Shown: one piece after another, positions 1-23,747 of the stretch | Layout: each line of letters begins with the position of its first letter | Position numbering within the stretch: position 1 is the first letter of the stretch | NCBI GenBank assembly: GCA_033442325.1 | Contig: JAWQFM010000034.1 | Location: 723,965 to 752,076, forward strand | DNA length: 28,112 nt | DNA from: Salpingoeca rosetta | Taxonomy: Eukaryota > Protista > Choanoflagellata | Reading direction: 5' to 3' | Made by a program: the position numbers and the translations under genes | The notes under the pieces: generated by a model | The model's input: only the letters and a program-made list of their open reading frames with translations | Database searches by the model: none | Told to the model about the DNA's origin: nothing

Positions 1-3000
1 ACATTGCCGGCGTCCACATAGAGGCGAGGGGCATGCACGTGCCCACCCCCGTCGGACATCAAGCACGTTGGCTTGCAGGGTGATCCAGGTGACCGGGTCG
101 TTGTCGTACTGTCGCACCTCACCACCTGATAGCACGGTGAGGCTGTTAAAAGAGTACACGGATTGGTTCTGGTCCTATGTGGTACCAAACTTGCTCAACT
201 CCAGGACGCAGCCGCGACCAACAGTGAGGTCCTCCACGCCGCCAAAGAAGCCGAGAAGCCGGATGGTGATGCCAAAGCACTCAAACTTCTTTGGAAGCTC
301 CAGGTGACCGTAGCGGTAGGCGTACTGGTTCACACGCACTTCACCCAGCTCGGAGAACTGACCCACCATGAGCTGCTGCTCGCCAGTGTGCAACACGCCT
401 GTGCGGTCGCCCTCGAAGCGGTCCACGTGCAGGCCGTACGGCTGCTTCATCTCCGGCATCATGGCGAGCTCGCCCTTGTTGAGGATGCGCACAATCTCAA
501 AGTCGTACTTTGCAGCCGTGAGCGCAGGGAGCCACGTGCGCCCGCTGTCGCTGGAGATGTCGTCAAAGTCTGGCACCATGTCCAGACCGCCCTGGTCGCG
601 GTTACCAGCGTCAACAATCAGCGTGCGGTTGACAACACCAAAGCTGGTGTCACTCAGGTACACGGTGCCTGCACCGCCATTGCGAGTTGAGGCATCTGAT
701 GTGCCACCGTACGCCTCAAACGTGCCCTGGAAGAGGTGGATGCGCTTGTAGTGGACGGCAATGCGACCGCCAGCACCAGCACCATACGCGCCACCGCTGC
801 CACCGTGCACTTGAATGTGCCCAAAACCCTCAAAGTAGTTGACGTCCACGATGACGCTGCCGCCGGAGGCGAGGGAGCCGCCCGCGTTGGAGGAGATGGT
901 GCCCTCCAACCACAGGCGATCCGACACGACAAACTCCAGAGACACCACCGCGCGGCTCGAGCTGCNNNNNNNNNNNNNNNNNNNNNNNNNNNNNNNNNNN
1001 NNNNNNNNNNNNNNNNNNNNNNNNNNNNNNNNNNNNNNNNNNNNNNNNNNNNNNNNNNNNNNNNNNNNNNNNNNNNNNNNNNNNNNNNNNNNNNNNNNNN
1101 NNNNNNNNNNNNNNNNNNNNNNNNNNNNNNNNNNNNNNNNNNNNNNNNNNNNNNNNNNNNNNNNNNNNNNNNNNNNNNNNNNNNNNNNNNNNNNNNNNNN
1201 NNNNNNNNNNNNNNNNNNNNNNNNNNNNNNNNNNCGCTCGCCCTCGTTCTGCGCGTCCTCCACCACTGTGAGGGTGTACACGTCTGCCTCGTCTGCGACG
1301 GCGCTCAAGAAATCAACGGTGCCCGTGTCCTGCACCGTCATGCCGACGCAGGTGAGGTCGCGAACAGAGGTAAGCTGCCACTGCCACGTTGCGCCGTGCG
1401 AGACGAGCAGGTGGGCACGGTGCATGTTGGTGAACCCCCACGTGCGAATCGTGCAGGGGATGGACAGGCTGGGGTAGGCCGGTGAGTTCTGGCAGCGCCA
1501 CTCCACCGTGCGCTGGGGCAAAATCAGGTCCGCGTGTTCGTAGACCTGGGGCATGAAGGAGATGTTGTAGCGCTTCCACGGCTCGACGGAGGTGATGTCC
1601 AGCGTCTGGTTGGGCAGGATGTGCAGGTAGCCCGTGCGGTCGCCAACCACCTCCGTGGCGGTGATGCGCGCGTGCGAGTTGTCGTCTGTTGGGTGCTGGA
1701 ACACGAGATGAGCCGCACCATACACCTCCACGTACTCAAACTCAAAGTTGAATGTCTCCGTCTCTGGGAGCAGGAACGCCGCAGCGCCTGCCTGCCGCAC
1801 AGATGCGTGGTCTGCATCCGTCTGCATGCGCGACGAGCGACCGCGGTTGTCGGCGCGGAGGTTGCGGAAGTTGTTGGGCCCAACCAGGTACGCCAGGCCC
1901 GAACCGCCGTTTTCCCAGCCCGTGCCACCCTGGACGTCTGTCTGGTCGCTGTACCACTTGCCGCTGGCATAGTGGGCGATGATGAAGCCACCGCTGCCAC
2001 CACCGCCGTTGCCGGCGCCGTTGCCACCGATGACTTGCATGCGACCCGAACCCGTGAGCGAGGTGGTGAGGAGGTAGATGTTGCCGCCCGCACCGCCGCC
2101 ACCGCTGCCACCAGCGCTGTCTGCGTTGGCGCGAACAGTACCGGTGATGTGCGTGCCCGAGGGCCCGTACACGTGCGCCTGAATGTAGCCGCCACCGCGC
2201 GCACCGCTGCCTGACAGACCACCGCCAGAGCCCCAGACGGATGGCATCTGGTTCTCCACGGGCGGGGTGCTGGCGGCGTATCGGTAGTAGATGGTGCCCA
2301 CGGGAGCTGCTGCGGTCGTGTATGGGGTGCGGCCACCGCGGCCGGCGTTGCTACCGCCAGTTCCGGCACCGCTCGCTGCAATGCCCGCAGCAGGGCCGTA
2401 GGTTGCAAAGTGACCCTGGCCGTCCACCGTTACCNNNNNNNNNNNNNNNNNNNNNNNNNNNNNNNNNNNNNNNNNNNNNNNNNNNNNNNNNNNNNNNNNN
2501 NNNNNNNNNNNNNNNNNNNNNNNNNNNNNNNNNNCCACTCTGACGCGCGGCCGAGCGGCTCCAGTGCGTGGACGCGGCCGTTGTTGGCGATGCGACACGT
2601 GTTGATGTCGTACAGGCGACTCGGGAGAAACTCGAAGTAGCCAGACACGTACATGTGGGTCCACCACGGCTGGACGGGGTTGGCCACGGCCATCTTACCG
2701 GCGCGGTACGTGCCTTTGACGTAGAAGTCGTTGATGGCCATGGACGACTCGCCCGTGAAGGTTGCGCCGGCTTGGCGGGTGACCTGGTCCAGGTTCAAGG
2801 TGCTGCCGACGTCAACGGTGAGGCCGATCATGACCCCCGCGTTTTGGCTGCGCATGTTGACGTGGCGCCACGCCTCGACGGTGCCGGTGATGTTCCATTG
2901 GTCAACACGGGCGAGGTGCTCAAACGCGTCAAAGGTGAGCTTGGACCTGCGATGCACGCCAGAGCTTGAGCCCGACGTCCACGGCAGCGGGAGCAGCTCC

Positions 3001-6000
3001 ACCAGGTTGGCGCGAAGCTCAAACAGGCCCGCGTTGAAGGTACCGTCCTTGATGCGGATGTACACATTGTCGACGGTCGTGCCAATGCGGGACGGCTCAT
3101 ACGCGTACCACGCGCGCGGCGACGCGGCGTGGCCGTCAACGTCGAGGACAACTAGGCCGGACACGTCGATGGTGGAGGTGGTGTTGAGGTTGACCGGGCG
3201 CCTGACATGCATTTCGCCTGCAACAGTGATGCTGGTGAAGAGCGCGGGTGCAGAGACGAAGTTGGGGTCAAACGTAAACACGCCGCGGTCGTACGAATCG
3301 GGGCTGCTGCTGACGAGGGTCCGACCCACGGTGAGTGTGTCAACGGGTGGGAAGACGCATTCGAGGCGACCGGCGTCGAGTCGGCCATCAACACTGATGC
3401 TCTCAAAGTGCAACAGGGACGACGCATTGGCTGTCCATGTGTGATCCTGGGTAGCATGGCCAAGGCTATCGAGGGTCATGGTGCCACCGTGGTGCACGTC
3501 CAAAGACGTGGCGCGAGATGTGCGGTCCTGGTTGCGGATGCGAACCTGGCGCCGCACCGAAACCTCACCGCTCACGTCCATGCTGTCAACGTGTGCCTGG
3601 AAGTCGAAGGCGTCAAAGGTGAGCGTGCCACTGACGGTGACCTGCGCCGCCCTGAGCGCGAGGTATCCGCCGTCCATGCGGCCGGAGACGGAGACGGTGA
3701 CGTCGTCCACAACGCGGCCAATCACAGATTCCTTGTACTGGTCCCAGGGCACGGTTGGCACGCCCTGGTGCCCGTCGTCGTCCAGGGTGAGCGTGCCGCC
3801 CACGGACACGGTCTGCGTTATGTCAAAGTTGACGGGGCGGCGAACAGTCATGATGCCGTTGACGGTGACGGAGTAGAAGAGGGCCGGATCGCCAATGTTG
3901 ACGGGGTCAAAGGTGAACACGCCGTTGACTGTGGACGTGGGCGACACGACGGTCCTGCGTACTTCAAGCGTGTGCACGCCCGGCATGATGCTCTCCAGCC
4001 GGCCCGCGTTCAGGCGCCCGGCCACGATCAGGCTCTGGGTGTAGATGAGAGAGCTGGTGTTGCCAGTCCAGACGTGCTTGGGGGTATTGTGACCAAGAAC
4101 GTCGAGGGTGACGGTTCCAGAGTGCGTGAGCGAGAAGCCGTCCATGCGACTGCTGCCGTCCTGGTTACGGAAGCGCACGGGGCGCAAGACGCTGAGTGTA
4201 CCCGCCACATTGACGGAGCGGACCCAGGCGCGCTGTTGGTTGGCAGCATCAAAGGTCATGACGCCTGTGGAACCGATGCTGAGGGAGTCCGCCCGCAGCC
4301 AGAGGTAGCCGGCCTTGAAGCGGCCGTTGATGCTCACGTCGAGTGTGTAAATGGTGCTGCCGAGCACCGAGGGCGGGAAGGCTTCCCACGCCGGCGCGTC
4401 ATCTGCCGTGTGGCGCTCGTTGTCGAGGGTGATGATACCGGCGCTGCTGGTGATGGACAAGCTGTGTGTTGTGGTGAGGTTGATGGGCTTCTCCACCGTC
4501 AGCGTGCCCGAGACGGAGATGGTCTGGTACCGGATGACGTGGCCGAGAGATGGCGGATCAAATGTCATGGTGCCGCCGACGACGAGGTCATTCGTGCCCT
4601 CCAGGTACGTCTCGTACTGGCCAGCGCTCAACACGCCGTCCACGCGCATGGTAGCGGTGTGCACGTGGGACACGGTGGGCTGCGACCACGCCTTGGTGCC
4701 CGTGGCGTGGCCAACAGTGTCCAGGGTGACGCTGCCTGAGGCAGTGATGGTGAAGAAGTCCATGCGGTCCACCTTGTTGCGGGCGTGCACGTGCACGGGG
4801 TTTCGGATGTCCACGTCTCCGCCGATTGTGGCGCGTGTGAAGTGCACGCGATCGGCAGTAGCCTCCATGGTGATGGCGCCACCGGTGCCGACGGTGAGGG
4901 TGCCGCCCTCAAGCTCCACCAGGCCCGCACGGAAGGTGCCGGACACGGAGAGCAGGTCCGTGTGCAGGGAGGAGCCTGTCGCTGTTGACCAAACGCCGGG
5001 CGCGTTGCTAGTCTGCGCGACGTAGTCGAGGGTGAGGACGCCCGAGGAGCCGACAGAGGCGGAGGTGAGGTTGCTGGTGCAGTCCCTGGCGCGGATGGTG
5101 AGCTGGTTGTCGATGAACAGCCTGCCGCCAACGCTGAGGGTGGTGGTGCACGCAATGTCGTTCTTGGCACGCATGGTTGTGGTTCCGCCCGAGATGGAGG
5201 TGGACGCGGCAACAAGCTCAAGCAGGCGGGCGGTGAAGGTACCGGCGCTGGAGACGGCGTCCGCGTGCAGCGATGAGCCGGCGGGCAGCCAGTCGTCGTC
5301 GTCGTCGATGGACACGGCGCCGGAGCCGCCAATGGCAAACGAGGTCATCGGCGACGTGCCGTCCTGTGCACGGAACACAACGCGGTTGTAGACGGTGAGG
5401 CGGCCGTTGGAGTACAGGTCGTCGACGCGAAGCAGATCGTCCTTGACGAGCATGGTGACGGCCGCGTTGCCGCTGGTGAGGCGGAACGACCCCGCGCGAA
5501 CGTTGACGTGGCCGGCCTGCCACGTGCCGCTGACGGTGATGCTGACGTCATCGATGGTGGCGCCGATGGTGGAGACGTAAGTGGTGTCGAAGACGGAGCT
5601 GTTGTCGCTGCTGGTGGCGTGGGCGATGTTGTCAAAGACGAGGAGCCCGCCCACGGACATGTCCTTGAGGCGGTGCAGGGTGACGGGCACGTTGATGTAG
5701 CTGGTACCGCCGACAGCAAGCGTCTGCACGGGTACCTGCTCCTCGTAGTCGTTGAACGTAAGGTCCATGCGGCCGTTGATGGTGAGCGTGTCGACAAAGT
5801 CGAGGTCGACGCGGGTGAGACCAGGATACATGGTGCAGCCTGAGCCCACGGTCCAGAAGTCAATGCCCACCATAGACGTGTCCGTGAATACACCATCGTC
5901 ACGCAGGTAAGCGACGTAGTCCCAGTACATGACTGCACCTGGGGACCCCGGCGACGAGAGGGTGATGGACTGCGAGCGGCCGCCGGCGGCAGTGTACCAC

Positions 6001-9000
6001 GACACGGGGTGGTAGAAGTACACGGTTGAGTCTGCTGCGCTCAGCGTGTTGATCTTGGTTGTGCCGTTCACGTCCACGCGCAGGGACGACGAAGAGGCCA
6101 GAGTGACGGCAAGGACATCGAAGGTGCAGCCGCCAAGGCGGACATGGGACGATGCCTGCACGGTGAGGGAGGCGAGGTCCACGCTGGTGGTCGGTGTAGA
6201 CCAGAAGCCGAAATCAACGACGACCGTGCTGGTGGTGGCCGGCAGCGCGGAGTCCTTGAAGCTGAACATGCCAATGGCGTTGAAGGTGTGCCGCAGGACA
6301 CCGCTGCGCGTGGGAGAGGCGCCACTGGAAAACGCGCCGCCCTGCTCAGTGATGTGGTGCTCCTCGTTCTGCCACACCCACTCGACCGTGTCGCCGTAGT
6401 GGATGTTGAGGTCCTGCCAGCCGGCGGTCGGCGACCACTGGATACGGTGCGTGGTAGGTTGCGAGCGCTGTGCATCCAACGCGAGGGAGGAGGACGAGTC
6501 AACGGTCACATCTGCGGCGCTGAAATCAACGGCGCCGTCGATGGTGAGCAAGGAGCGAACGAGGGACGTGGCGAGTGTGGATGCGAGCGTCCATGCTGTG
6601 GTCGGGCTGCTGCGCAGAACAGTGAACTTGGTGTCGCTCAGCGAGAGCGAGGCCGTGCGCAGCTGCGTTGTGGGGGATGTTGCGTGCAGGGTCACGCCGC
6701 TTCCCATGCGGGAGAAGGACAGGGCCGGTGTGTTGGGCACGGTGAGCTTGCCAGCGACGTCGAGAGTGCCCGACACGTCCACTGCACCAGAGCCCTTGAG
6801 CACGAGCTCTGCCCTCGGTCCCACAATGGCGCGGGAATCGAGCAGGGTGAGCACCTCGACCTTCTGTGACTCCATGACGTGGAAGACGCCCGTCTGCCCA
6901 TCAATGGAGGTGAAGGAGGCGGTGGCGCTGCCGCCCTCCACAACCACCAGGCCGCCCTCGCGGATGATCAGGTGGTCCACTTTGCTCGACCAGTACGCCG
7001 GATCGTACAGGAACGCGGTGTCTGTAAGGGAATGTTTGGGGTTGTGGTTGGGGTTGGGAGAAGTGGGGGGGGGGGTGTTAAGGATGAGTATGGTGGGAGG
7101 TGTGTTGGGGTGAGATGAGTGTGTGGATGCGAGGTGCGTGGGATGAGTGGTGTGTTGAGTGAGAGAAGAAACAAGGGTTGAAAGCAAAGGAGGGCAGGCG
7201 CGTAAAGGTGGCAGGAAGGGAAGGTGACAGAAGGTAATGGGGCAACAGAAAGGGACCGACAGCGAATGAAGACATTCAAACACACGCACACACAACCACA
7301 CCACCGCACACACACACGCACACCTTTGTAGTCTGCAAGCCACGCTGTGTGATCGTCAGCAGGGGCCACGCTGGTTTGGCGGAAGGCGCGCCCGGCGTCA
7401 ATCTCAAGCGACTTCTCGCTGATCATGTATACAATTCCGGGCCCACCGTTACCAGATGCTCTCGTGCCTAAGATGCAAGAATGAGGGATGTGAGCGTGGA
7501 AGGGGGAGGGGAAGTGTGGTTGAGAGGTGACATTAGAAGACATTGGTAAAACACAGCGCAACACAACGCGACGCAACACCGCATGACAAAGCAAAGCAAC
7601 CATCTTACGTTGGTTGACGGTGACGGTAAAGCTGCAGTAGACGGACGCGCTGTACAGGAACACCTTTGTCACGCCAAGGTGGAAGCGGGACCCTGGTGCG
7701 ATGGATGCAGACAGGCCACTCTGCACGGTGAAGGAGACGACGGCGTCGTTGCGGTCGACGTCTGCCGTGATGGTGATGTCTGCTGGACACAGGCCGCTTG
7801 TCTCCGTGAGCATGTTGGGCGTCACCACCACCTGCGTGGTGCACGTGTCTGTGGCGTAGATGCCGTCGGAGGCGGAGAAGGTGAATGCGTGTGTGCCTGT
7901 GCCAACAGTGGCCGGCATGGACGGGCTGGACACGCCAACTTGCGGCCAGACGGCAACGGTGGAGGGCAACACGGCGCCCGAGGGATCGACAGCTGTTGGG
8001 GTATCAAGAGTGATGGTGGCACTGGACGTGCCATGGTGCAACTGGCTCTCGGGGCAACTGGATGATAGTTGGGGGAGGGAGGGGGGTGCAAACGGATGTG
8101 ACGAAGGCGGTTGGGGGGTTGGGGGTTGGGAGGGACATGAAGGGGCGTTTAGAGAACTAGATAGTTTATGTTGGAGAGAGCGGCGTGCAACAAACACATG
8201 TGTGTGCGTGCGCTGACACACAGACAAAGACACAGACGGAAGTAATACATCCATTGCAGCTGCAGGTCCACTCACCCGTTGACAAAAAGAGGCGATGGAT
8301 GAACGGGCAGCTGGTTATTGCTTGTTGGCGTCTCGGCGTACCCGAGGACGTCCATGCGGGCGCCAACGGCGGTGCCGCCGAGCGGGTAGATGCGAATGCA
8401 GCGTGCACGCACGGGTCTGAAGCGGGTAAACACCTTCTGCGTGGGGCTGGTGCTGCCGAGGAACGTGCGCGTGACGCCCTCCTCGCCGTATGTGGTGAAG
8501 GTGCTGCAGTCGAGCGAGTACTTGACCTCAAACTCCCGCACGACGTACCGCGTCAATTCGTTGCCTGTAGCGTTGGAAGGGTTGAGAGAGAGTGGGGGGG
8601 GGACAGGGGGGTGAGTGAGTGAGTGAGTGAGTGAGTGAGGGTGTTGCGAAAGGCACGGGTGTTTGTGAAAGACGGAGCGCACAGGCCCACACGACCGTGT
8701 GCGCGGGGGCGACTTAAAACGCACATCCGTCACAGTAGTCTGGGCAAAACGACAAGGTTGGCATAGGAACAGTGTCTACGGTAGCGCATGCACACTCAGA
8801 TGCATGGACGCGCAAACACCAAAATGCAAACACCGACACGCAAACGCATGAGCATGACTCCACAGACTGAGAGCATGCAAAGACGAGTGCAAGGACCCAC
8901 CCTGTGTGACAACGCCGGAGACAACGTATACATTGCCCAGGTTCATCTGCAGGTACGGGTCGGCATCGTTCGTGTTGGGGCTCCAGCCACCACCAGCAGA

Positions 9001-9184
9001 CACGCCACCGTACAGGCGCGCCCAGTCGTCAAGGTGGCCCGGGGTTGAATCGACGCTGTACGAGTACGAGTTGCAGTTGCTGATGACACTCGTCGAGCAC
9101 TGCAACTGGTCGCGGGTGACGGGGAGCCAGCTCGACGCAGACACAGCCCCGATGCTCGCCGTTGCATGAAGCTGCACATCGGGC

Positions 9185-9247
<63 letters not shown>

Positions 9248-12200
9248 AATTGTGTGTGCAATTGTGTGTGCAATTGTGTGTGCAATTGTGTGAGTCAGGC
9301 ACTCCAAGGACATGGCAAGTACTTGGTACATAGCACATGGAGATGGCAGTTGCTTGAACTTCCACAGCGAGCGCACGCGTACACGATGTACACACACACA
9401 CACGCACACGATACACACGCACACACACGCTCGCACGATACACACTCTCTCGCACGCTACACGCACATACACACAAACACATACACACAGAGAATACACG
9501 CACGTGTGAGGCCGCCGTGGGCTTGGATGAGGGCCGAAGGGTAAGTGCGGACTGCTGCCTCGACAATGACCTCGCCACCGGCACCAGCACCGCCGTACGT
9601 GGACCCTGTGCCGCCATTGGCCTGCACAAGGGACAGCGACCCGCCACCAAGAAACTCCTGGCACACGATGCGGATGGTGCCGCCAGAACCACCACCGGCA
9701 CTCGCAGTCGAGGCATCCTGGCCATTGGCAAGCAGCTGTCCGTACAAGACAAACTGCTCCTCCACGAAGATGTCGAGTACGCCACCACCGAGGCCGCGGC
9801 CCTGACCACTGATGTCGCCGCCGCCGGCAGCACCGCCGCTGAGCGACTGCAAGTGCTGCGACGGGTCGCTGGCCTGCACCGCTGCAGAGTTGCCGCCGGC
9901 CGTCCAGAAGGAACCGCCGGCTGCGCCCTGCCCGCTCGCGGTGGCCGACGGGGCCGGGGTGGAGCACGCAAGCGGCAGGGGCTCGGCCACGATGCTGGCG
10001 AACTTGGTCACGGTGAGGTTGCCGCGCACGATGATCCTGGGGTAGGTGCAGCCGTTGGGCTTGACGGTGACGACCGTGTCTTCGCTGAACACGACGCTCT
10101 CCAGAAACTCCATGTCCGTGGACGAGTTGATCTCGCACGCGTCGCAGCTGCTTGTGCAGCCGCTGTACGTGCACGTGTCATCGCATGAGCCGGTGCAGCG
10201 CCGGCAACCACTGTAGCACGTGTGCGTGTGTATGTTTGTGTATGTTTGTGTAAGTGTGTGTGTGTGTGCGTGCGAATGTGTGCGTGTGTGTGTGTGTTTG
10301 TGTGTTTGTGTATATTTGTGTGTGTGTGTGTGTGTGCGTGTGTGTGTGTGTGTGTGATGGTGTGTGTGTGTGTGTGTGTTTACACGTGAGCGCGTGGGAG
10401 GATGGAATCAAGTGTGATGGGAAGCAATGACAGTGCACGCTGGCCAGAGAGCAGAGCGCGCGGTGTGGAGGTATGGGACGGGCAGGTCAAAGGAAACAGT
10501 TGAATACACCACTACCGCCACCAGCAACGATTGGCACGCACATGTCGCAGCTGGCGTCGCAGGCGCAAGACGAATCGCAGCTGCTGCTGAAAGAGTCACA
10601 GCTGTCATCGCACGCACAACTTGTGCGGCAGTGCCCGTTGCAGTACGAGCACGATGTATCGCAGCCACCTGTGCATGACACACTGTAACCGATGGCGCAG
10701 ACAAGTGATGGCGGTGAGCAAGAGGCGGCCAGATGTGCCCAACGGCGAAGCAAAAACAAAGCAATGCAAACTCGCTGCGAGAGGGCGGGAAAAGAGTGGG
10801 ACCAACACGACAAACATGATCCAGACAGCTGGGTACCTTGAGCAGCCATCACAGCTGCCAGTGCAGGTCAGCCCTGCTGCACGACGCACGCGCTGTCAAC
10901 AAAACAGCAAATTGATGGTGCGTGGTGACACGTGAGTGAGTGAAAGTGGCATGACATGTGCCATGATGATAGAGCGTGCCATGTGCAGTTCATTTCAACA
11001 AGAAGAAGCAAGCACCGAACGAAAAACGGCGCACGTTGCGCGCGCTGAGAATCGCTGCTGTTCACGACAGCATAAAAATATGAGAACCAAAATGGAGGAA
11101 TTGGCGCATTTGGAGACGCGAAACTCACGGAAAGCGGCGTGTTGTGTGCTTGCTGCGCACGAAACTCGGCCGATGTCACGTCCACAGGCAATCGTGCAGC
11201 ACGGCGTGCGAGGGCGTCAGTGGTGGCGTGCCCGCTGCTTGTCGTGTTTGTGGATGTGCAGAGGTGGCTCAGGACAGCAGCTGCTGCATCGTCGCTGCAC
11301 GCTCGATCAACAAGCATGTGGACGCCGTCGGGGTTGAGGAACGCGCTCAGGTCAAGCACGCTCTCGTACGCCTGCAGCAGTCGCGGCCGCAGCGCTTCAC
11401 ACTTGTCCTGATAGGTGGTGACAAACGCCTCCTTTGCAGCCGCACTCGTGGCGTTGCCCTCGAGAGCAACAGCGCACAGGCCGCCGTCGCCGCTGTTGAG
11501 CTGCCACGTGGGCACTGCCTCGAGAAAGGGGACGCCAGCGTCCTCGTCCACCAGCGCCTGCACCGCGTGGCGCCAGGACGCCGCAAACTCGGCATCTTCG
11601 ATGCTGGCTGCGTGCGTGCCGCCAAAGACGAGCGCGTCCGCCCAGGATAGCCCTCTGCGCTCAAGGGAAACAGTGAGATGCGTCGAGCCTTCCTCGTTGG
11701 CAAGCGCAAAGTGGATGATGCCCTTTGGCATGTACATGACGTCGCCCGCCCTCAGCGTGAAGTTGGTGCACGCCATGCCGCTCAGGTCCGCGTCGCTGTA
11801 CCTCGTGCAGCCTTGCTGCCGCCGCTGCCGAATCTCCTGCAGCTGCGCCAGCTGTGCTGGTGTCATCTTCGGCTGCGCGGTTGCGGCTGCTGTTGCGTCG
11901 GTGTCGGCCACACTGGCATTGGCACTGCTGCTGCTGCTGCTGCTGCTGGCGTCGTCGTTTGCAGCGGAGGAGCTCTCGGGTGCGCTGCTCGGCACGCAGG
12001 CTGTCCACCGCTTGCTGCCGCTCGTCTGCAGCACCAGGACATCGTATGGGTCCGTGTGCGGCTGAAGCGCGCGCGAGTCCTGCTGCGTTGCGTGGTAGAC
12101 GTGAACTGTGGAGTCCATGCCGAACACGCGACGCACGCCGGCCTGCAGCTGCTCCACTTGCTCCTGGACTGGCGACGTGTGCATGTCCTCGAAGCGAACA

Positions 12201-12419
12201 AGCACGCCGGCACCAGCCGCTAGCTCTTCGCGCATGTGGCTGCACGATGTCACCTGCCGCGTCTCGCCCTCGTCCTTCACCTGTCGAGGAACGGGAGAGG
12301 AATTTGGGGGGGGGGGGGAACGGTGACGTTGGTGTGAGCGGGCGTGTGTGTGTGTGGGGGGGATTGTGCGTGTGTGTGTGTGTGTGTGTTTACATGTGCG
12401 CGTGTGCGTGTGTGTGGGC

Positions 12420-12501
<82 letters not shown>

Positions 12502-12511
12502 GTGTGTGTGC

Positions 12512-12551
<40 letters not shown>

Positions 12552-12997
12552 TGTGTGTCAACAACAAATGCGCAAGACTCCCCGATACACAATGTCCCGC
12601 CATCGAATAAACCACGCCCACAACCTCCTGCATGAACACACACACACACACACACCTGCATGAAGCCTGATGTGACGGCGGACTGTGCCTCGAAATGCTG
12701 GCACAGAACATCAACATCAGAGAGAGGCGCGAAGAGAGAGCGCAAGGGTGCGGACACATTTGCGATGCCGCCAGGGCGATGGTCCACAAACGTGTCTGTC
12801 TGGTAGATATTGTGGAAGAACTCTCCGTGTTCAACAGAGGGAAAGAAGTCTGACAAGGAAAGTTCAGGTGTAGAAACTGCTGGGGCAACGACTGCCGCTG
12901 TTGCTGCTGCCAGAAGAGGAGTTGTGAGTGTGCAGAGCAGCAGGCAGGCCACAAACACAGCCGGCAAAGGCCGTGGGCGCTGCCTTGCCGCCCTCAT
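1..12997 (-). CDS. Giant secreted/surface multidomain protein, 5' part (3'-partial): signal peptide + JmjC (Cupin_4/ROX-like) + Cys-rich module + Gly-rich repeats + F5/8C + HYR x2 + cupredoxin-like + beta-solenoid repeats
   Basis: Hand-spliced GT-AG exons, all phase-consistent: 12997-12656, 12280-11129, 10892-10837, 10682-10542, 10210-9504, 9185-8901, 8564-8276, 8057-7609, 7467-7324, 7021-2535(gap), 2434-1235(gap), 965-<1. About 10.2 kb of sequenced coding DNA. Starts MRAARQRPRPLPAVFVACLLLCTLTTPLLAAA. In-frame TAG at 177-175 and an apparent frameshift near 50. Continuity across the N gaps is assumed. Confidence 0.8.
966..1234. other. Assembly gap (269 N)
   Basis: N run. Confidence 1.
2435..2534. 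other. Assembly gap (100 N, probably a placeholder of unknown size)
   Basis: N run; the coding frame differs on the two sides. Confidence 1.
2600..5700 (-). repeat. Degenerate protein-level beta-solenoid repeat array (~85-95 aa units, alternating into ~180-aa super-repeats)
   Basis: Recurring G.VTLD..GH....W....S.......V.G...AG.LE and GTLTFD...V.G.L.V.RPV motifs in ORF 2430..7343. Confidence 0.75.
6217..6455 (-). other. Cupredoxin/plastocyanin-like domain lacking the C-terminal copper ligands
   Basis: LNIHYGDTVEWVW...HHI...FSSG...RHTFNAIGMFSFKD...TVVV follows the plastocyanin pattern, but the Cys/His/Met loop is absent. Confidence 0.6.
7612..8300 (-). other. Two HYR (hyalin repeat, Ig-like) domains
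   Basis: P.F..GCP...TPTAVDPSG...GTHAFTFSASDG...DTCTTQVVV and CPADITI...AVVSF...PGSRFHLGVTKV...CSFTVTV. Confidence 0.75.
8338..9185 (-). other. F5/8 type C (discoidin) domain, two exons
   Basis: VSASS...ARLY...GGWSP...DPYLQMNLGNVYVVSGVVTQG / V.EFEVKYSLD...F...VRARCIRIYP...ARMDVLG is the classic discoidin pattern. Confidence 0.85.
9187..9292. repeat. (TG)~30 microsatellite plus (CAATTGTGTGTG)x~4, intronic, abutting a splice acceptor
   Basis: Seen directly. Confidence 0.95.
10130..10892 (-). other. RVRR site followed by a Cys/Asp/Ser-rich module (22 Cys in ~82 aa, across 3 exons)
   Basis: Spliced translation RVRRAAGLTCTGSCDGCSSVSCTGGCDTSCSYCNGHCRTSCACDDSCDSFSSSCDSSCACDASCDIGCRRCTGSCDDTCTYSGCTSSCDACE. 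Confidence 0.8.
10220..10380. repeat. Imperfect (TG)n microsatellite, intronic
   Basis: Seen directly. Confidence 0.9.
11660..12860 (-). other. JmjC / Cupin_4 2-oxoglutarate-Fe(II) oxygenase domain, ribosomal-oxygenase (NO66/MINA53/YcfD)-like, split by one intron
   Basis: Motifs VHVY...ALQPHTDPYDVLVLQTSGSKRW and LRAGDVMYMPKGIIHFA...STHLTVSL match the ROX consensus (GFAPHYD..FVLQLEGRKxW; LxPGDLLYxPRGxxH...SxHLT). HxD at ~12058-12050, distal His at 11713-11711, conserved Lys of GxKxW. Confidence 0.9.
12343..12655. repeat. (TG)n tract (12343-12557) and (CA)~10 tract (12636-12655) at opposite ends of intron 1 of the JmjC gene
   Basis: Seen directly. Confidence 0.92.
12900..12997 (-). other. Predicted N-terminal signal peptide
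   Basis: Basic n-region MRAARQRPR, hydrophobic h-region AVFVACLLLCTLTTPLL, Ala-rich cleavage region AAATA. Confidence 0.75.
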
Positions 12998-13378
12998 GCC
13001 TTCCTTCTCGTTGCGCTGTGTCGCTGCTTCTCCTTTCGGCAAGAAAACAGCAAGCGCGATAGAGAGTTGGGGATTGGAAAGGGGGACGGCCTTCTTTGGC
13101 AGCGGGCCGTTCGTGTTCGCTTCGGGTTAATAATCCCTCCACCGCTGCACAAGGTGCAGAGTGAACAGAGGTGTGGTGTGTACGATGTGAGCGGCGCAAA
13201 CTGCGGGGTTGAGGGGGGAACGGCACAAAAGTGTTTGTGGTGTGTGGTGGTTGTGTGCGTCTGTGTGTTCTGTGTGTTGCGTGCGCTCAGAGCGCAGGCG
13301 GGCTGCAATGCGACCGCTTCGCGGGAGCGTGTGTTGTTTGCGACGGGCCCAAGCACGAGCACCAAAATCAACAAATCT

Positions 13379-13713: not shown

Positions 13714-15569
13714 TTACTCGCCGCCACCGCCGCCGTTGTTGCCGCCGCGCGCAACGAGGGCCGCAGCAATCTTCTCGATGGGCATGGACTGCAGCACAAC
13801 GGTGCCGGGGCCTGTCAGCACGGAGTTGAACAAGCCCTCGCCGCCGCAGCAGCACATGAGCAGGCCGCCTGCACGACGAACGGCGTAGTTCACCGTCGAC
13901 TGGAAAGCAACGACAGCTGTGTGTGTGGTTGGGGGGGGGGGTTAAGTGTGTGTGTGTGCGTGTGTGTGTGCGTGGTGTGTATGTGTGTGTATGTGTGTGT
14001 ATGTGTGTGTGTTGGACTTTTTGGATGAGAGTTTGAGAGGTGCCTGGCGTCGGACAGTGAGGCAAGAACGATGATGCAATACGACATGGCGAGATGCGCA
14101 GATGTGCAAGAAGCGCAACGCGTGTGTGCTGACGCAGGCAAGCGAGCGTCAGCAATCAAGCAGCCATCAGCAACACATACATGACTGGTCGCAGATGAGC
14201 TCCTCGCCGGCTTCGAGCTTGCGCATCAGAACAGTGCCAGATGCGTTGAGGAAGACCATGCCATCACCAGACAGGTCGTTCAGGATGAAGCCCTGGCCAC
14301 CGCAGCACCCGGCGCCAATCTGGTGGAGCAAGCGTGTGCACGTGTGTGTGTGTGTGTGTGTGAATGTGCGTGTGTATGTGTGTGTGAATGTGTGTGTGAG
14401 AGAGAGCGTATGCATGTTTGTGTATGTGTGTATGTGTGTGTGAATGTGTGTGTGAATGTGTGTGTGTGTGTGTGAGAGCGTATGCATGTTTGTGTGAATG
14501 TGTGTGTGCGTGTGTGTCAGACAAGCGAGAGTCATGACGTGGATTCAAAGACTCTCACAGATACTGTAACGAGCGGCGAAAGAACACGCACACACGCACG
14601 CACACAACAGAACACACGCACGCACGCGCACACACACCACACGCACGCACACAACAGAACACTCGCACACACCACACCACACGCACGCGCACGCGCACAC
14701 ACAGTGGTGTTAGTCGTTGACGTACGCCAGCAAAGCGGTAGGAGAAGGTGGGCTCGCAGTTGTGGGCGCACATGAACGCACGGCTCTTGATGGTGATGCG
14801 ACCACCAAACTCGGCCAGGTTCACGGGAACAATCTTGGCGGGGAAGTTGGGGGTCAGCCCGATGTGCTGAGTCTACTCACGCAGACAACAAGAGGAAGGT
14901 GGGAAGCGAATGCAAGTGTGGCAGTTGCACAATGCGCGTTAGTACCTTGAGTCAAAGTGAACGTGGTGGCCAAAGCAAGGCAACTGCCCAAGTGTGAACA
15001 CCAATCTGCAACGTGGGCAGGCAAGGCATGCGAGTTTGCAGAGACAACCAACAAGACGCTCACGCACACATACACATACAATCGTCCACAAACACACACA
15101 CACACATACAATCGTCCACAAACACACACGCACGCATGCATACGCACGCACGCGCACACGCACGTGTACACATGGACACAACACATCTCGCCCACCGTCT
15201 CAGTGTTGTTCTGGTACTTGACACGGAAGAAGCTTTCGCCGGCGCAGCAGCTGCGTGTGCACGCCTGCCCACAGCCCCCGCCGAGGTGCACGTCTGGCTT
15301 GAGGCCGGATGACATGTGCACCATGGTGCCCTGAGCGACAAAGGGGGGATGGGGAGCAGGTAGGTTGAAGGCGAGTCGCAGTGGTGCAATGTGAGTGGGT
15401 TCAGGTGTATGCACGGTACTAAGCTCACGCATCGTGGCATGAATGTATCAAGCGCAAACGCACGGGTTCGGCGGTGACGGCGTCGTTGGGGTTGAGGACA
15501 ACTTCAAGGATCTGGGAGCCATCCCCGACAATCTGCATGTGTACATGCGTGTGTGTGTGTGTGTGTACA

Positions 15570-16249: not shown

Positions 16250-16853
16250 CGACCTTCGGCATCCTTCAGCAGTATGGCGCTGCCTTTCAACCAGCTCCTG
16301 TTCCTCCTCAAAGTCCTCATCCCGGGAGTTGTTGAAGTCATCGACGGAAATGTCCAGTTTCAGCGCGGCCTTAAGCGAGGGCAACATCACCAAGGTTTTC
16401 AGCTTGAGGCGCTCCAGTTCCATCTCCCATCTCCAGCAGGAGCACAAACAGTTCCAGCAGGACGAACCCCATCAAGCCGAGGACCAGGCTGATGGTGGCC
16501 ACCGTGCCTGGCGACAGCTTTGCTCCGATCCGGATACCCAAACTGCACTCACTGGGGCCGACCGGCTCCAGTGTGCTTGTTGTGCCATTGGCCAAGATGA
16601 AGTCGCTGCAGCCAACCTCGCGCAGGAAATCGGGACTGAGGCTTGAGCTAAACGCTGGACCGGGGAACACCATCTCGCCCTCCGCCGTCCACGACGGCGT
16701 GTACTCGTTGTCGTTGGTGGTCCAGGCGTGAAGTCGAGCACAGAAAACCACAAACTCAAACAGGAAGAAGATGAGGAAATGCACAATGGGCGCAACGAAG
16801 CGCACGCGACGTGCCGAGCGCGGGCGATGCAAGCAGCACTTCAGGACGAACCA
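16250..16853 (-). pseudogene. Degenerate coding-like remnant, possibly retropepsin-like (clan AA aspartic protease fold)
   Basis: Fragments in shifting frames: AVVD / AEGEMVFP / LSPDFLREVG..FILANGTTSTLEPVGP / VSAVW / VLL / EMELERLKLK, then an acidic tail DDFNNSRDEDFEEEQE. Several frameshifts are needed and there is no intact DTG. Confidence 0.25.
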
Positions 16854-16953
16854 NNNNNNNNNNNNNNNNNNNNNNNNNNNNNNNNNNNNNNNNNNNNNNN
16901 NNNNNNNNNNNNNNNNNNNNNNNNNNNNNNNNNNNNNNNNNNNNNNNNNNNNN
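16854..16953. other. Assembly gap (100 N, probably a placeholder of unknown size)
   Basis: N run; it truncates the upstream giant gene. Confidence 1.
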
Positions 16954-16958
16954 CTCAC

Positions 16959-22900: not shown

Positions 22901-23747
22901 CCAGCATGGGCACCATCGACAGCAACTCTGCCATCAATGCTGGCGTCCTGCGTTTCCACGCGGATAAAACCACCACCACGCCCGCCGTTAGTGTTGCCGC
23001 CGCCAGAGCCGAAGCGGTCCGCCCAGTACACGCAGCCGTGCTCGTCGACATGTGTGCCAGACACGGGCCCAGATGCGCCACCATAGCTGCCGCCAGTTCC
23101 GAGCATGAGCCCACCGCCAAAGCCTTGGCCAAAGGCATGGCCGAGGCCCGTGGCGGAGAGCACAGCGCCGTAGCCAACAGTGAACGTGGTTGACGTGAAG
23201 ATGACATGGCCCGCATCCATCTGCCCACCTGCAGTGAGCAAAAAGTCAACAGCAGAGAAGCGCATGGCCGTATCAGCCACACGCGTGTGCTGCTGCAAGG
23301 GTACGTCGCTGCCTTGCACGCCGTCGTAGGCGCCGTCCTCGGCATCTCCTTCAATGGTAACCTGGCCATCCTGTGCAACCTCAAAGTACCGGAATGACAG
23401 CTGACCCGGGGGATCGATGAACGTGTATGAGCCCGCGCCCTCGCCCGTGGCCGTGTGACTTGTGCGGCGGAAGCGCACGGTGGCACCGTTGCTGACAACC
23501 ATCTGATTACCGCCTGTGAGCAGACCTTGCAGGTCCAGGGTTGGCGACACGGAGGTGCCCGGGACTGTCACCCGCTGCGGAAGCACCAGCTCAGCCGAGG
23601 GCTCGACCACAAATGCGCTCGGAAGTGAGAGCGGGCGGCTCACAGCTGCTCGGGACACAGCCACATACAGAGACACGCCATCACGCACATACGCGCGAGC
23701 AGTTGCATCACCAGTGACACGACGCAGGATGATCTTGGCAGTGGCCC
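16959..23747 (-). CDS. Giant Gly-rich repeat / beta-helix extracellular protein, downstream segment (continues the 23745-28112 segment after a 1-nt frameshift; 3'-partial at gap)
   Basis: ORF of >2200 codons with ~400-aa units: GGxHGG..G..YG....P...GSxGG / GGGxGGSI.I....L.G.G.I.A.GG / GSGGRIAV / F.G....GG / GGAGTVY. Ends in a probable donor G|GTGAG at 16958 just before the N gap. Confidence 0.85.
18587..19521. repeat. Exact tandem duplication: 458 bp x2 (18587-19044 and 19064-19521) with a 19-bp spacer; period 477 bp, in frame
   Basis: Line-by-line comparison showed no mismatches. Spacer tgagagcctgtttacctcg at 19045-19063. Protein reads ...FEQVH-EVNRLS-GGWMKL... Confidence 0.97.

What the first reader, a model, noticed from the sequence alone, without database searches (positions are those of the whole stretch)
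10130..12997. Secretory-pathway ROX-type JmjC oxygenase fused to the N-terminus of a giant extracellular repeat protein
Seen: a signal peptide is followed by a JmjC domain with an intact HxD...H iron triad and 2OG-binding Lys. Phase-consistent canonical introns join it, without a stop, to a Cys-rich module and thousands of residues of Gly-rich/beta-solenoid repeats, F5/8C and HYR domains. Known: ROX enzymes (NO66, MINA53, YcfD) are intracellular His/Arg hydroxylases of ribosomal proteins; luminal protein hydroxylation is mainly attributed to P4H, PLOD and AspH, although a luminal JmjC (JMJD8) exists. Inference: this could be a self-modifying surface/matrix protein that carries its own hydroxylase. 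I do not recognise the architecture as described. The raw ORF track hides it because the JmjC ORF appears to stop at 10868.
Basis: partly seen in the sequence, partly recalled or inferred. Interest (0 to 1): 0.9.

Follow-up and report, generated by a model that had tools for sequence, protein, structure and literature searches.

The report
Secreted JmjC oxygenase heading surface protein
A choanoflagellate (Salpingoeca rosetta) gene really does place an iron/2-oxoglutarate oxygenase of the ribosomal-oxygenase type behind a signal peptide at the head of a large extracellular protein. The gene model is already in GenBank and the architecture was described by computer analysis in 2010, so it is an untested member of a known oddity, not a new kind.

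Summary
On the minus strand, ATG 12997 opens a signal-peptide-like N-terminus. It is followed by a JmjC_2 domain (Pfam E 5e-17) with H189, D191, H315 and K204 intact.

These lead to an RVRR site, a Cys array, a Gly-rich region and an F5/8C domain.

- **Already annotated.** My spliced model equals GenBank PTSG_13037 (4280 aa) over its first 2682 residues.
- **Already described.** Iyer et al. 2010 (PMC2938197) reported extracellular MINA/No66-clade JmjC proteins expanded in Monosiga. I find at least 12 paralogues in S. rosetta and members in eight choanoflagellate species.
- **Long form not shown by RNA.** The X4 contig reads through the exon-7 donor to a TGA (991 aa) and ends at 8169. X4 holds few words of the downstream giant exon.

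What I did not find in the papers searched: an R-x-K/R-R site followed by a C-[D/N]-x-x array sits after the JmjC head in 29 of 48 family proteins, against 2.4% of control windows. This suggests a head that is cleaved off and works in the secretory pathway. Self-modification remains untested.

The parts
12998..13213 (-). 5' UTR as far as the RNA contig reaches
   Evidence: The X4 contig starts at 13213. The first in-frame ATG is at 12997.
12656..12997 (-). Exon 1 (aa 1-114): signal-peptide-like N-terminus plus the N-terminal strands of the oxygenase domain; NVS sequon at N80
   Evidence: Sequence. Hydrophobic maximum 3.1 at residues 13-22. The motif 'LSDFFP..FF.NIYQ' is shared with P0008 and P0154.
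12281..12655 (-). Intron 1: 375 nt, in frame, no stop, mostly (CA)n
   Evidence: Skipped in the X4 contig. The ambiguous 7+3 letters fit junction 12656/12280.
11129..12280 (-). Exon 2 (aa 115-498): JmjC double-stranded beta-helix core plus helical extension. Carries H189, D191, K204, H315, four sequons, eight Cys, and ends '...LPVDVTSAEFRAQQAHNTPLS'.
   Evidence: Pfam JmjC_2 E 4.9e-17. PDB alignments. AF2 model pLDDT 87.6. NO66/MINA53 are the top structural matches.
10881..10892 (-). RVRR (aa 499-502): dibasic furin/kexin-type motif, the first four codons of exon 3
   Evidence: Sequence. [RK]x[RK]R lies before the Cys array in 29/48 family proteins against 2.4% of control windows.
10837..10892 (-). 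Exon 3 (56 nt): RVRR and the start of the Cys array
   Evidence: Joints 10892/11129 and 10682/10837 in the X4 contig.
10542..10682 (-). Exon 4: Cys array with four-residue period C-[D/N/T/S]-x-x
   Evidence: X4 contig piece 10542-10682. 22 Cys in aa 499-600, with spacing mostly 4.
9504..10210 (-). Exon 5: end of the Cys array, then a Gly-rich region (aa ~600-800; 19.5% Gly)
   Evidence: X4 contig piece 9503-10210. Composition. Nearest Atlas clusters are bacterial hypothetical proteins at 0.94. No Pfam hit.
8901..9185 (-). Exon 6: N-terminal half of the F5/8 type C domain
   Evidence: X4 contig piece. Pfam profile positions 16-55. On the spliced protein E 6.5e-15.
8276..8564 (-). Exon 7: C-terminal half of the F5/8 type C domain
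   Evidence: Joint 8563/8900 (cut +1) in X4. Pfam profile positions 60-123.
8169..8275 (-). Read-through of the exon-7 donor in RNA. In-frame TGA at 8274-8272 gives a 991-aa product. The RNA contig ends at 8169.
   Evidence: X4 contig piece 8169-8563 is unspliced. 216 + 2976 + 103 nt = 3295, the contig length.
7609..8057 (-). Exon 8 of the annotated long form: two HYR-like modules
   Evidence: Phase-consistent GT..AG. Identical to PTSG_13037. HYR E 0.005, below the cut-off. No RNA junction seen.
7324..7467 (-). Exon 9 of the annotated long form
2535..7021 (-). Exon 10 of the annotated long form: about 1500 aa of Thr/Val/Ser-rich repeats with no Pfam match, running into an assembly gap (N 2435-2534). 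The ORF continues to window base 1.
   Evidence: Word shares in RNA-like runs: X5 0.64, X4 0.17.

Best explanation
**Shown.**
- The stretch is the 5' part of Salpingoeca rosetta gene PTSG_13037.
- A signal-peptide-like N-terminus is followed by a MINA53/NO66-clade (ROX-type) JmjC domain. All three iron ligands and the 2-oxoglutarate-binding lysine are present.
- Splicing joins this head in frame to an RVRR site, a 22-Cys array of four-residue period, a Gly-rich region and an F5/8C domain.
- It belongs to a choanoflagellate-wide family (at least 12 copies in this genome). In that family the JmjC head, the dibasic site and the Cys array stay constant while the rest of the protein varies.

**Inferred.**
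- The protein enters the ER.
- The head works there or in the Golgi as a protein hydroxylase. Fe(II), 2OG, O2 and ascorbate serve P4H, PLOD and AspH in that compartment.
- A kexin/furin-like convertase then cuts after R-x-R-R and frees the head from the body.
- The most likely substrate is the adjoining C-[D/N]-x-x array, of the same or a neighbouring molecule. Other secretory cargo is the main alternative.

**Product length.** The annotated body continues to 4280 aa. The one RNA assembly examined favours a 991-aa form ending after F5/8C.

**My odds.**
- Real, expressed fusion and family member: 0.9.
- Catalytically active in the secretory pathway: 0.6.
- Cleaved at RVRR: 0.55.
- Cys array is the substrate: 0.25.
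For: **Domain and active site.**
- Pfam JmjC_2.
- HxD, H and K aligned to MINA53/NO66.
- K204 invariant; H189, D191 and H315 at least 90% conserved in 51 sequences.
- AF2 model pLDDT 87.6.
- Structural matches: NO66 Z 15.6, MINA53 15.5, YxbC 13.2, YcfD 12.2. Only these align past the core.

**Expression and splicing.**
- Spliced X4 contig with six canonical junctions, and stranded X16 reads on exons only.
- Identity to PTSG_13037 over residues 1-2682.

**Secretory location.**
- Five N-x-S/T sequons in the head, and family-conserved Cys C209, C272, C285.
- Hydrophobic N-termini in 37 of 62 full-length relatives, and C-terminal TM segments in many long ones.
- Partner domains Sushi, HYR, F5/8C and ephrin-receptor-like.

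**Cleavage site and Cys array.**
- Dibasic motif in 29/48 proteins against 2.4% of control windows. In 25 of the 29 it lies 1-13 aa before the first Cys.
- Only the Cys array is shared between this protein's body and other JmjC-headed proteins.
- The array is C-[D/N]-x-x: D or N follows Cys in 198 cases, the two commonest residues by far, and spacing 4 accounts for 166 of 268 gaps.
- P_proprotein (convertase P domain) at three or more loci in the genome.

**Published prediction.** Iyer et al. 2010 predicted hydroxylation of cell-surface proteins for the Monosiga relatives.
Against: - No enzymatic, localisation or cleavage data exist for any family member. No paper names this gene.
- The signal peptide was judged by eye and a hydropathy scan only. 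The long hydrophobic stretch (aa 13-40) could be a signal anchor.
- 19 of 48 family proteins lack a strict [RK]x[RK]R motif.
- In this gene only 10 of 22 array Cys are followed by D or N.
- The complex prediction of head against Cys array gave no verdict.
- The family sequences are related, so conservation counts are not independent events.
- The junction to the giant tail was not seen in RNA.
Confidence: 0.65

Rival explanations
1. The main product is a 991-aa secreted protein (head, RVRR, Cys array, Gly-rich region, F5/8C) that stops at the TGA inside the exon-7 donor. The giant downstream ORF is then a separate transcription unit or a minor alternative isoform that the annotation merged.
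For: - The X4 contig (depth 23.7) runs unspliced from 8563 to 8169 and ends there. Its length equals 5' UTR + 991-aa CDS + 103 nt exactly.
- X4 holds 0.60 of the words of 10100-13000, close to the exon share of 0.62. It holds only 0.17 of 2700-8050.
- X6-X9 also hold more of the head than of the tail.
Against: - Donor G|GTGAGT and a strong polypyrimidine-CAG acceptor at 8058 keep the frame open for more than 1690 further codons.
- No convincing start codon with a signal peptide opens the downstream ORF.
- The GenBank model uses the junction.
- X5 holds 0.64 of the tail words.
- No poly(A) tail was seen on the contig, so 8169 may be a coverage drop in a retained intron.
Confidence: 0.35
2. The head hydroxylates other proteins in trans: extracellular matrix, theca or cell-surface cargo passing through the same compartment. 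The fusion and cleavage only deliver or anchor the enzyme, and the Cys array is a structural stalk.
For: - Iyer et al. 2010 proposed modification of cell-surface proteins.
- Known luminal hydroxylases (P4H, PLOD, AspH) act in trans (established knowledge).
- The tails are highly variable.
Against: - It does not explain why the Cys array and dibasic site always follow the head, whatever the tail is.
- It does not explain why there are at least 12 copies, each with its own head.
Confidence: 0.25
3. The extracellular JmjC domain is a sensor, not a modifying enzyme. It reads O2, Fe, 2OG or redox state and signals through the membrane-spanning body.
For: - Suggested for the Monosiga proteins that carry SH2 or tyrosine-kinase tails.
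- Several long relatives have a C-terminal TM segment and a tail.
Against: - PTSG_13037 has no predicted TM segment beyond the N-terminus and no signalling domain.
- 2OG and Fe(II) are scarce outside the cell (established knowledge).
- A cleavage site between sensor and body would uncouple them.
Confidence: 0.1
4. The head is a pseudo-enzyme: a folding, chaperone-like or binding pro-domain that kept the JmjC fold but does no chemistry.
For: - No activity has been shown.
- The luminal JmjC protein JMJD8 has no established catalytic activity (my knowledge).
- Pro-domains removed at dibasic sites are often folding aids (established knowledge).
Against: - The Fe and 2OG ligands are invariant or nearly so across 51 sequences that share only 21-53% identity with this one.
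- They are also kept in all eight S. rosetta paralogues read.
- Such conservation is not expected without catalysis.
Confidence: 0.1

Closest known systems
Extracellular MINA/No66-clade JOR/JmjC 'receptor-like' proteins of Monosiga brevicollis (Iyer, Abhiman, de Souza, Aravind, NAR 2010, PMC2938197)
   Same: - Signal peptide and an N-terminal extracellular JmjC of the MINA/No66 clade.
- Fusion to Cys-rich modules, a glycine-rich repeat (GlyRR) and other extracellular domains.
- Lineage-specific expansion in a choanoflagellate.
- Monosiga members (P0026, P0028, P0046, P0112, P0165) are direct hits of this domain.
   Different: - A different species and a different tail: F5/8C, HYR-like modules and a giant repeat with no Pfam match. 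There are no Sushi, Ig, SH2 or kinase domains and no C-terminal TM in the annotated model.
- None of the passages I read from the 2010 paper mentions a conserved dibasic site, the four-residue Cys array as a constant partner, or transcripts.
Ribosomal oxygenases NO66 (RIOX1), MINA53 (RIOX2) and bacterial YcfD/YxbC
   Same: - JmjC_2 Pfam family.
- HxD...H triad and the 2OG lysine at the MINA53 K194 position.
- Helical extension after the core.
- Best sequence and structure matches in the PDB.
   Different: - Those enzymes are nucleolar or cytoplasmic and hydroxylate His or Arg of ribosomal proteins.
- This one has a signal peptide, sequons and family-conserved Cys, and sits on an extracellular protein.
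- No winged-helix strands appear in the model.
- Identity is about 20%.
Aspartyl/asparaginyl beta-hydroxylase (AspH) acting on EGF-like domains
   Same: - A 2OG oxygenase working in the ER lumen on Asp/Asn residues next to Cys in disulfide-rich extracellular modules.
- This is the functional analogy for the proposed action on the C-[D/N]-x-x array (inference).
   Different: - A different 2OG-oxygenase family, by my knowledge; not compared here.
- It is a separate type II membrane enzyme acting in trans, and its substrate consensus differs.
- No evidence here for Asp/Asn hydroxylation.
JMJD8 and the predicted secreted JMJD5-like family of animals
   Same: JmjC-fold proteins with a signal peptide in the secretory pathway (JMJD8 from my knowledge; the JMJD5-like family).
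   Different: - Those belong to the FIH/JMJD5 clade, not the MINA/No66 clade.
- They are stand-alone proteins, not fused to a giant body. As far as I know, no convertase-type site or Cys array is described for them.

Membership tests
ROX subfamily of JmjC 2OG oxygenases (NO66/MINA53/YcfD) | JmjC double-stranded beta-helix matching Pfam JmjC_2 (PF08007, formerly Cupin_4) above its cut-off | tested here: met
   62.1 bits against a cut-off of 22, E 4.9e-17. 54.6 bits on the spliced protein.
ROX subfamily of JmjC 2OG oxygenases (NO66/MINA53/YcfD) | HxD...H iron-binding triad | tested here: met
   H189, D191 and H315 align with the MINA53/NO66 motifs. They are at least 90% conserved in 51 sequences. 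Residues checked.
ROX subfamily of JmjC 2OG oxygenases (NO66/MINA53/YcfD) | Lys binding the C5 carboxylate of 2OG, 15 residues after the first His (MINA53 K194; residue number from my knowledge) | tested here: met
   'GSKRW' aligns with 'GEKHW'. K204 is invariant in alignment A1.
ROX subfamily of JmjC 2OG oxygenases (NO66/MINA53/YcfD) | Helical dimerisation domain following the JmjC core | tested here: inconclusive
   The model has helices 213-345. Only ROX structures align up to model residues 335-370, while other JmjC proteins stop at about 207. Dimerisation itself was not tested.
ROX subfamily of JmjC 2OG oxygenases (NO66/MINA53/YcfD) | C-terminal winged-helix domain | tested here: inconclusive
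   No beta-strand after residue 206 of the exon-2 model. The alignment to NO66 ends at chain residue 578-582.
ROX subfamily of JmjC 2OG oxygenases (NO66/MINA53/YcfD) | Intracellular enzyme acting on ribosomal proteins | tested here: not met
   Signal-peptide-like N-terminus, five sequons, and splicing to F5/8C and Cys-rich extracellular modules. The substrate itself cannot be tested with these tools.
Choanoflagellate extracellular MINA/No66-clade JmjC proteins (Iyer et al. 2010) | N-terminal secretion signal followed by a MINA/No66-clade JmjC domain | tested here: met
Choanoflagellate extracellular MINA/No66-clade JmjC proteins (Iyer et al. 2010) | The same polypeptide carries extracellular modules (Cys-rich, GlyRR, Sushi/Ig and others) | tested here: met
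   The RNA contig joins the head to the Cys array, Gly-rich region and F5/8C. The Cys array is homologous to those of P0182, P0008, P0176, P0010 and P0013.
Choanoflagellate extracellular MINA/No66-clade JmjC proteins (Iyer et al. 2010) | Receptor-like topology: C-terminal TM segment with an intracellular SH2 or kinase domain (in the paper's wording) | tested here: not met
   PTSG_13037 has no hydrophobic segment beyond the N-terminus and no such Pfam domain. The end of the annotated model may be incomplete.
Choanoflagellate extracellular MINA/No66-clade JmjC proteins (Iyer et al. 2010) | Choanoflagellate origin and closest kinship to the Monosiga members | tested here: met
   The genome holds PTSG_11500 at 99% identity. 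Named close relatives are all choanoflagellates: Salpingoeca rosetta, Monosiga, Hartaetosiga, S. infusionum, Microstomoeca, Choanoeca, Barroeca and Bicosta.
Proprotein-convertase (furin/kexin) substrates | R-x-K/R-R motif in an exposed linker of a secretory protein | tested here: met
   RVRR at aa 499-502, between the head and the Cys array. Family-wide enrichment 60% against 2.4%. Convertase P domains are present in the genome.
Proprotein-convertase (furin/kexin) substrates | Actual cleavage after the motif | not testable with these tools
   Needs a western blot or N-terminal sequencing of the native protein.

The most novel reading that the evidence does not exclude
The JmjC head is a built-in, single-use maturation enzyme. 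While the protein passes through the ER and Golgi, the head hydroxylates Asp/Asn (or other residues) of the adjoining C-[D/N]-x-x array. A convertase then removes it at R-x-R-R. This would be a eukaryotic 'enzyme as pro-domain' arrangement, akin to a RiPP leader/enzyme pair and to AspH on EGF domains, conserved across choanoflagellates.
Probability: 0.2. Interest if true: 0.8.

Novelty: new member of a known kind. Interest (0 to 1): 0.42.

Why it matters
ROX-type oxygenases are known as intracellular hydroxylases of ribosomal proteins. [quoted passage not shown]

The architecture has been on record since 2010, but I found no paper that tests it. Three things here make it testable:
- **Transcript proof** of the fusion in S. 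rosetta, an organism in which forward genetics is established (papers listed) and, to my knowledge, genome editing too.
- **A constant three-part head:** JmjC, dibasic site, C-[D/N]-x-x array. This gives a concrete substrate and processing hypothesis.
- **A candidate short secreted isoform** of 991 aa.

If the head proves to be a cleavable hydroxylase acting on its own protein, it would be a new mode of post-translational maturation in eukaryotes. If not, it remains a curious lineage-specific expansion.

Tried and rejected
- **Complex prediction**, head (aa 38-498) against Cys array (aa 503-600): score 0.01, no verdict. Not evidence either way.
- **Single-sequence fold of the Gly-rich region** (aa 596-800): pLDDT 33.8, unusable. 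'Beta-solenoid' stays unverified.
- **Pfam on the giant exons** (2535-7019, 178-963, 1237-2433) and on the upstream giant ORF (16756-28112): no significant family.
- **Atlas search of aa 1189-2000:** no usable hit.
- **Genome sequence downstream of the window** (L009, L010) reads N, so the 3' end of the gene could not be read from DNA. The window's high end is the contig end.
- **Homologue search limited to 398-1267 aa:** no copy of this gene's own product, so no independently called short form is on record.
- **Cys-array search in the own genome:** only four matches, all just downstream of JmjC exons. Too few to show exclusive co-occurrence.
- **Self-BLAST script for internal repeats:** returned nothing, for a technical reason. 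The period of the giant repeat was not determined.
- **Only one read-laying run was allowed.** It began at 8000, so junction 8276/8057 and the tail could not be examined in reads.
- **Phylogeny against human NO66/MINA53:** Placement rests on PDB sequence and structure ranks, and on Iyer et al.
- **Rejected idea:** that the spliced contig is DNA. It lacks six GT..AG introns.

Full report
**What is in the sequence**

The window is a GC-rich eukaryotic stretch whose introns are largely (CA)n/(TG)n microsatellites. Exon 1 (12997-12656) encodes MRAARQRPRPLP-AVFVACLLLCTL-TTPLLAAATA, which has the layout of a signal peptide. It was judged by eye and a hydropathy scan, because no SignalP was available.

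Exon 2 (12280-11129, 384 aa) matches Pfam JmjC_2 (PF08007) at E 4.9e-17, 62 bits against a cut-off of 22. phmmer against the PDB finds MINA53 and NO66 first (E about 1e-6). It aligns 'PHTDPYDV' with 'PHYDDVEV', 'GSKRW' with 'GEKHW', and 'STHLTVS' with 'STHVTIS'. That gives:
- H189 and D191 (the HxD pair)
- K204 (the MINA53 K194 position; residue number from my knowledge)
- H315 (the distal His), all checked

**Structure**

An AlphaFold2 model of exon 2, built on a 51-sequence family alignment, has mean pLDDT 87.6.
- Foldseek ranks NO66, YxbC, MINA53 and YcfD first.
- VIA-align gives NO66 Z 15.6, MINA53 15.5, YxbC 13.2 and YcfD 12.2.
- JMJD5 and other JmjC proteins score Z 11 or less and align only to the core, residues 1-207.

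So 'ROX-type' is right for fold and active site. A winged-helix domain is not evident: there is no strand after residue 206.

**Is the fusion real?**

Yes, as far as F5/8C. The single read-laying run put one contig of run X4 (3295 nt, depth 23.7) on these pieces:
- 13213-12666
- 12283-11129
- 10892-10837
- 10682-10542
- 10210-9503
- 9178-8900
- 8563-8169

Joints are listed at 11129/10892, 10837/10682 and 8900/8563, and piece ends lie at 10542/10210. The few unassigned letters at two microsatellite-flanked joints fit 12656/12280 and 9504/9185.

A contig lacking six introns must come from RNA. The 34 raw reads of the stranded RNA run X16 lie only on exons, all with the first mate on the plus strand. 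That fits a minus-strand RNA.

The spliced frame reads ...NTPLS|RVRRAAGLTCTGSCDGC... It runs through a 22-Cys array (aa 499-600) and a Gly-rich region (aa ~600-800, 19.5% Gly). It then enters an F5/8C domain split by a phase-1 intron. The domain scores E 6.5e-15 on the spliced protein.

**How far does the gene go?**

Splice sites with consistent phase (8276/8057, 7609/7467, 7324/7021) extend the frame without a stop through two HYR-like modules. HYR scores only E 0.005, below the cut-off. The frame continues through about 1500 aa of Thr/Val/Ser-rich repeats into an assembly gap.

This model is identical over residues 1-2682 to GenBank 'hypothetical protein PTSG_13037 [Salpingoeca rosetta]'. 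That entry is 4280 aa, and UniRef names it 'Ribosomal oxygenase 2'. A partial S. rosetta protein, PTSG_11500, matches the window's genome at 99%. The organism is therefore S. rosetta, and the fused model is already public.

RNA does not yet show the long form:
- The X4 contig runs unspliced past the exon-7 donor. It meets TGA at 8274-8272, giving a 991-aa product, and ends at 8169.
- Its length equals 216 nt of 5' UTR + 2976 nt of CDS + 103 nt.
- X4 holds 0.60 of the sampled words of 10100-13000, which matches the exon share of 0.62. It holds only 0.17 of 2700-8050.
- X5, from the same study, holds 0.59 and 0.64.

So the tail is expressed somewhere, but in X4 the head-to-F5/8C transcript dominates. 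No poly(A) tail was seen, so 8169 may be either a true 3' end or the fading of a retained intron. I could not lay reads again because the cap is one call.

**The family**

phmmer of exon 2 against 1.84 billion representatives gave 1788 hits, 153 of them at E 1e-10 or better. Many are 2000-4200 aa proteins with the JmjC near residue 200. The close hits that carry names are all choanoflagellates:
- Hartaetosiga balthica
- Salpingoeca infusionum
- Microstomoeca roanoka
- Monosiga brevicollis (at least five)
- Choanoeca flexa
- Barroeca monosierra
- Bicosta minor
- S. rosetta itself

Several of these are complete ORFs from transcriptomes. That is independent transcript evidence for the architecture.

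Their tails differ: Sushi, HYR_4C, Ig-like, ephrin-receptor-like and fn3 domains. Many end in a TM segment and a cytoplasmic tail. S. rosetta has at least 12 loci with this head. All eight paralogues I read keep PHTDPYD, GSKRW and SSHLT.

In the 51-sequence alignment:
- K204, W206, C209, C285 and P299 are invariant.
- H189, D191, H315 and C272 are at least 90% conserved.

More distant hits are MINA/NO66-like proteins of diatoms, haptophytes and dinoflagellates.

**What is constant beside the head**

Only residues ~500-600 of PTSG_13037, the Cys array, find counterparts in other JmjC-headed proteins. The array has a four-residue period, C-[D/N]-x-x. Across 12 members, D or N follows Cys in 198 cases, far ahead of any other residue. 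Spacing 4 accounts for 166 of 268 gaps.

A dibasic motif sits directly before the array:
- RVRR here
- RQKR, RSRR, RTRR, RARR, RNRR, RKRR and others elsewhere

[RK]x[RK]R occurs in the 45 aa before the array in 29 of 48 proteins. It occurs in 2.4% of other 45-aa windows of the same proteins. In 25 of the 29 it ends 1-13 residues before the first Cys. The flanking linker itself is not conserved.

The genome encodes convertase P domains at three or more loci. The sequences are related, so these counts are not independent events. Even so, the motif persists among family members that share only 21-53% identity with this head.

**Mechanism, shown and inferred**

Shown:
- an expressed, spliced fusion
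- an intact cofactor site
- secretory-type features: signal, five sequons, family-conserved Cys, extracellular partner domains
- the constant trio of head, dibasic site and Cys array

Inferred:
- The head folds and acts in the ER or Golgi lumen, where other 2OG hydroxylases (P4H, PLOD, AspH) find Fe(II), 2OG, O2 and ascorbate (established knowledge).
- It is then separated from the body by a kexin/furin-like convertase.
- The substrate is unknown. The ever-present neighbouring array is the best candidate, by analogy with AspH on Cys-flanked Asp/Asn of EGF domains. I put this at about 0.25.
- A complex prediction gave no verdict.

**Comparison with what is known**

[quoted passage not shown] They list fusions to GCC2/3 repeats, Ig, disintegrin or Sushi domains and SH2 or kinase tails. 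Their figure legend lists a glycine-rich 'GlyRR' domain also found in prokaryotes. That fits my Atlas result for aa 596-800, whose nearest clusters are bacterial hypothetical proteins. They predicted hydroxylation of surface proteins or redox sensing.

The architecture is described by sequence analysis and the gene is annotated. Nothing has been tested, and no paper I could search names the gene or the S. rosetta family.

**Verdict**

This is a new member, in another species and with a different tail, of a known kind.

- junction-level RNA proof of the fusion
- the candidate 991-aa form
- the family-wide coupling of head, convertase-type site and C-[D/N]-x-x array

Interest is moderate, 0.42. 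It would be high only if the cleavable self-modifying head were shown.

Two first-reader notes from the scan, s1-434453 (RVRR) and s1-434475 (Cys module as cis-substrate), cover the same stretch. I tested the first across the family and the second only partly.

Noticed in passing
window 16756-28112 (-): Another giant open frame (2310 + 1490 aa in two overlapping ORFs) lies upstream on the same strand. It has no Pfam match, is interrupted by an N gap at 16854-16953, and runs off the contig end at 28112. Its relation to the tail of PTSG_13037 was not examined.
   Followed up: partly
window 14854-15432 (-): A 192-aa ORF with a weak AIM24 (PF01987) match (E 6e-6, just over the cut-off) lies between the upstream giant ORF and the JmjC gene. 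It is probably a separate small gene.
   Followed up: no
window 8169-8275 (-): An RNA contig reads through the exon-7 donor G|GTGAGT, whose own TGA closes the frame, and ends at 8169 ('...CTCTCCAACA'). This could be an intronic polyadenylation site giving a 991-aa secreted isoform, or a retained intron.
   Followed up: partly
window 8254-8058 (-): Inside that intron an ATG (MDVLLPSVSLSVC...) is in frame with exon 8 and no stop intervenes. It could in principle serve as an alternative start for the tail. The peptide is only weakly hydrophobic.
   Followed up: no
G000 C21:1270832-1271875 (+) and C21:780660-781712 (-); C29:541263, 558826, 592665; C6:1488553, 1668319: The JmjC-headed genes of S. 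rosetta occur as near-identical inverted copies about 490 kb apart on C21 (96-99% to PTSG_11500) and as clusters on C29 and C6. This points to recent duplication. All keep the same exon boundary ('...KEQGETRQV' to '...PVDVTSPRFRK').
   Followed up: partly
window 12281-12655, 10211-10541, 9186-9503 (-): Introns are filled with (CA)n runs and stay open in frame for over 100 codons. Raw ORF tracks therefore translate them as long 'THTHTH'/'CVCVCV' stretches and blur exon ends.
   Followed up: yes
G000 C29:524749-525009 (+): This is the best JmjC_2 match in the genome (82 bits) and is not one of the extracellular family. It is likely the canonical intracellular NO66/MINA53-type gene, lying about 16 kb from a cluster of the extracellular copies.
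   Followed up: no
P0060/P0184 (Prymnesium parvum), P0068 (Seminavis robusta): Distant MINA/NO66-like domains also sit in long proteins of a haptophyte (JmjC at aa 863-1078 of 1210) and in a 558-aa protein of a diatom. Their architectures were not examined.
   Followed up: no
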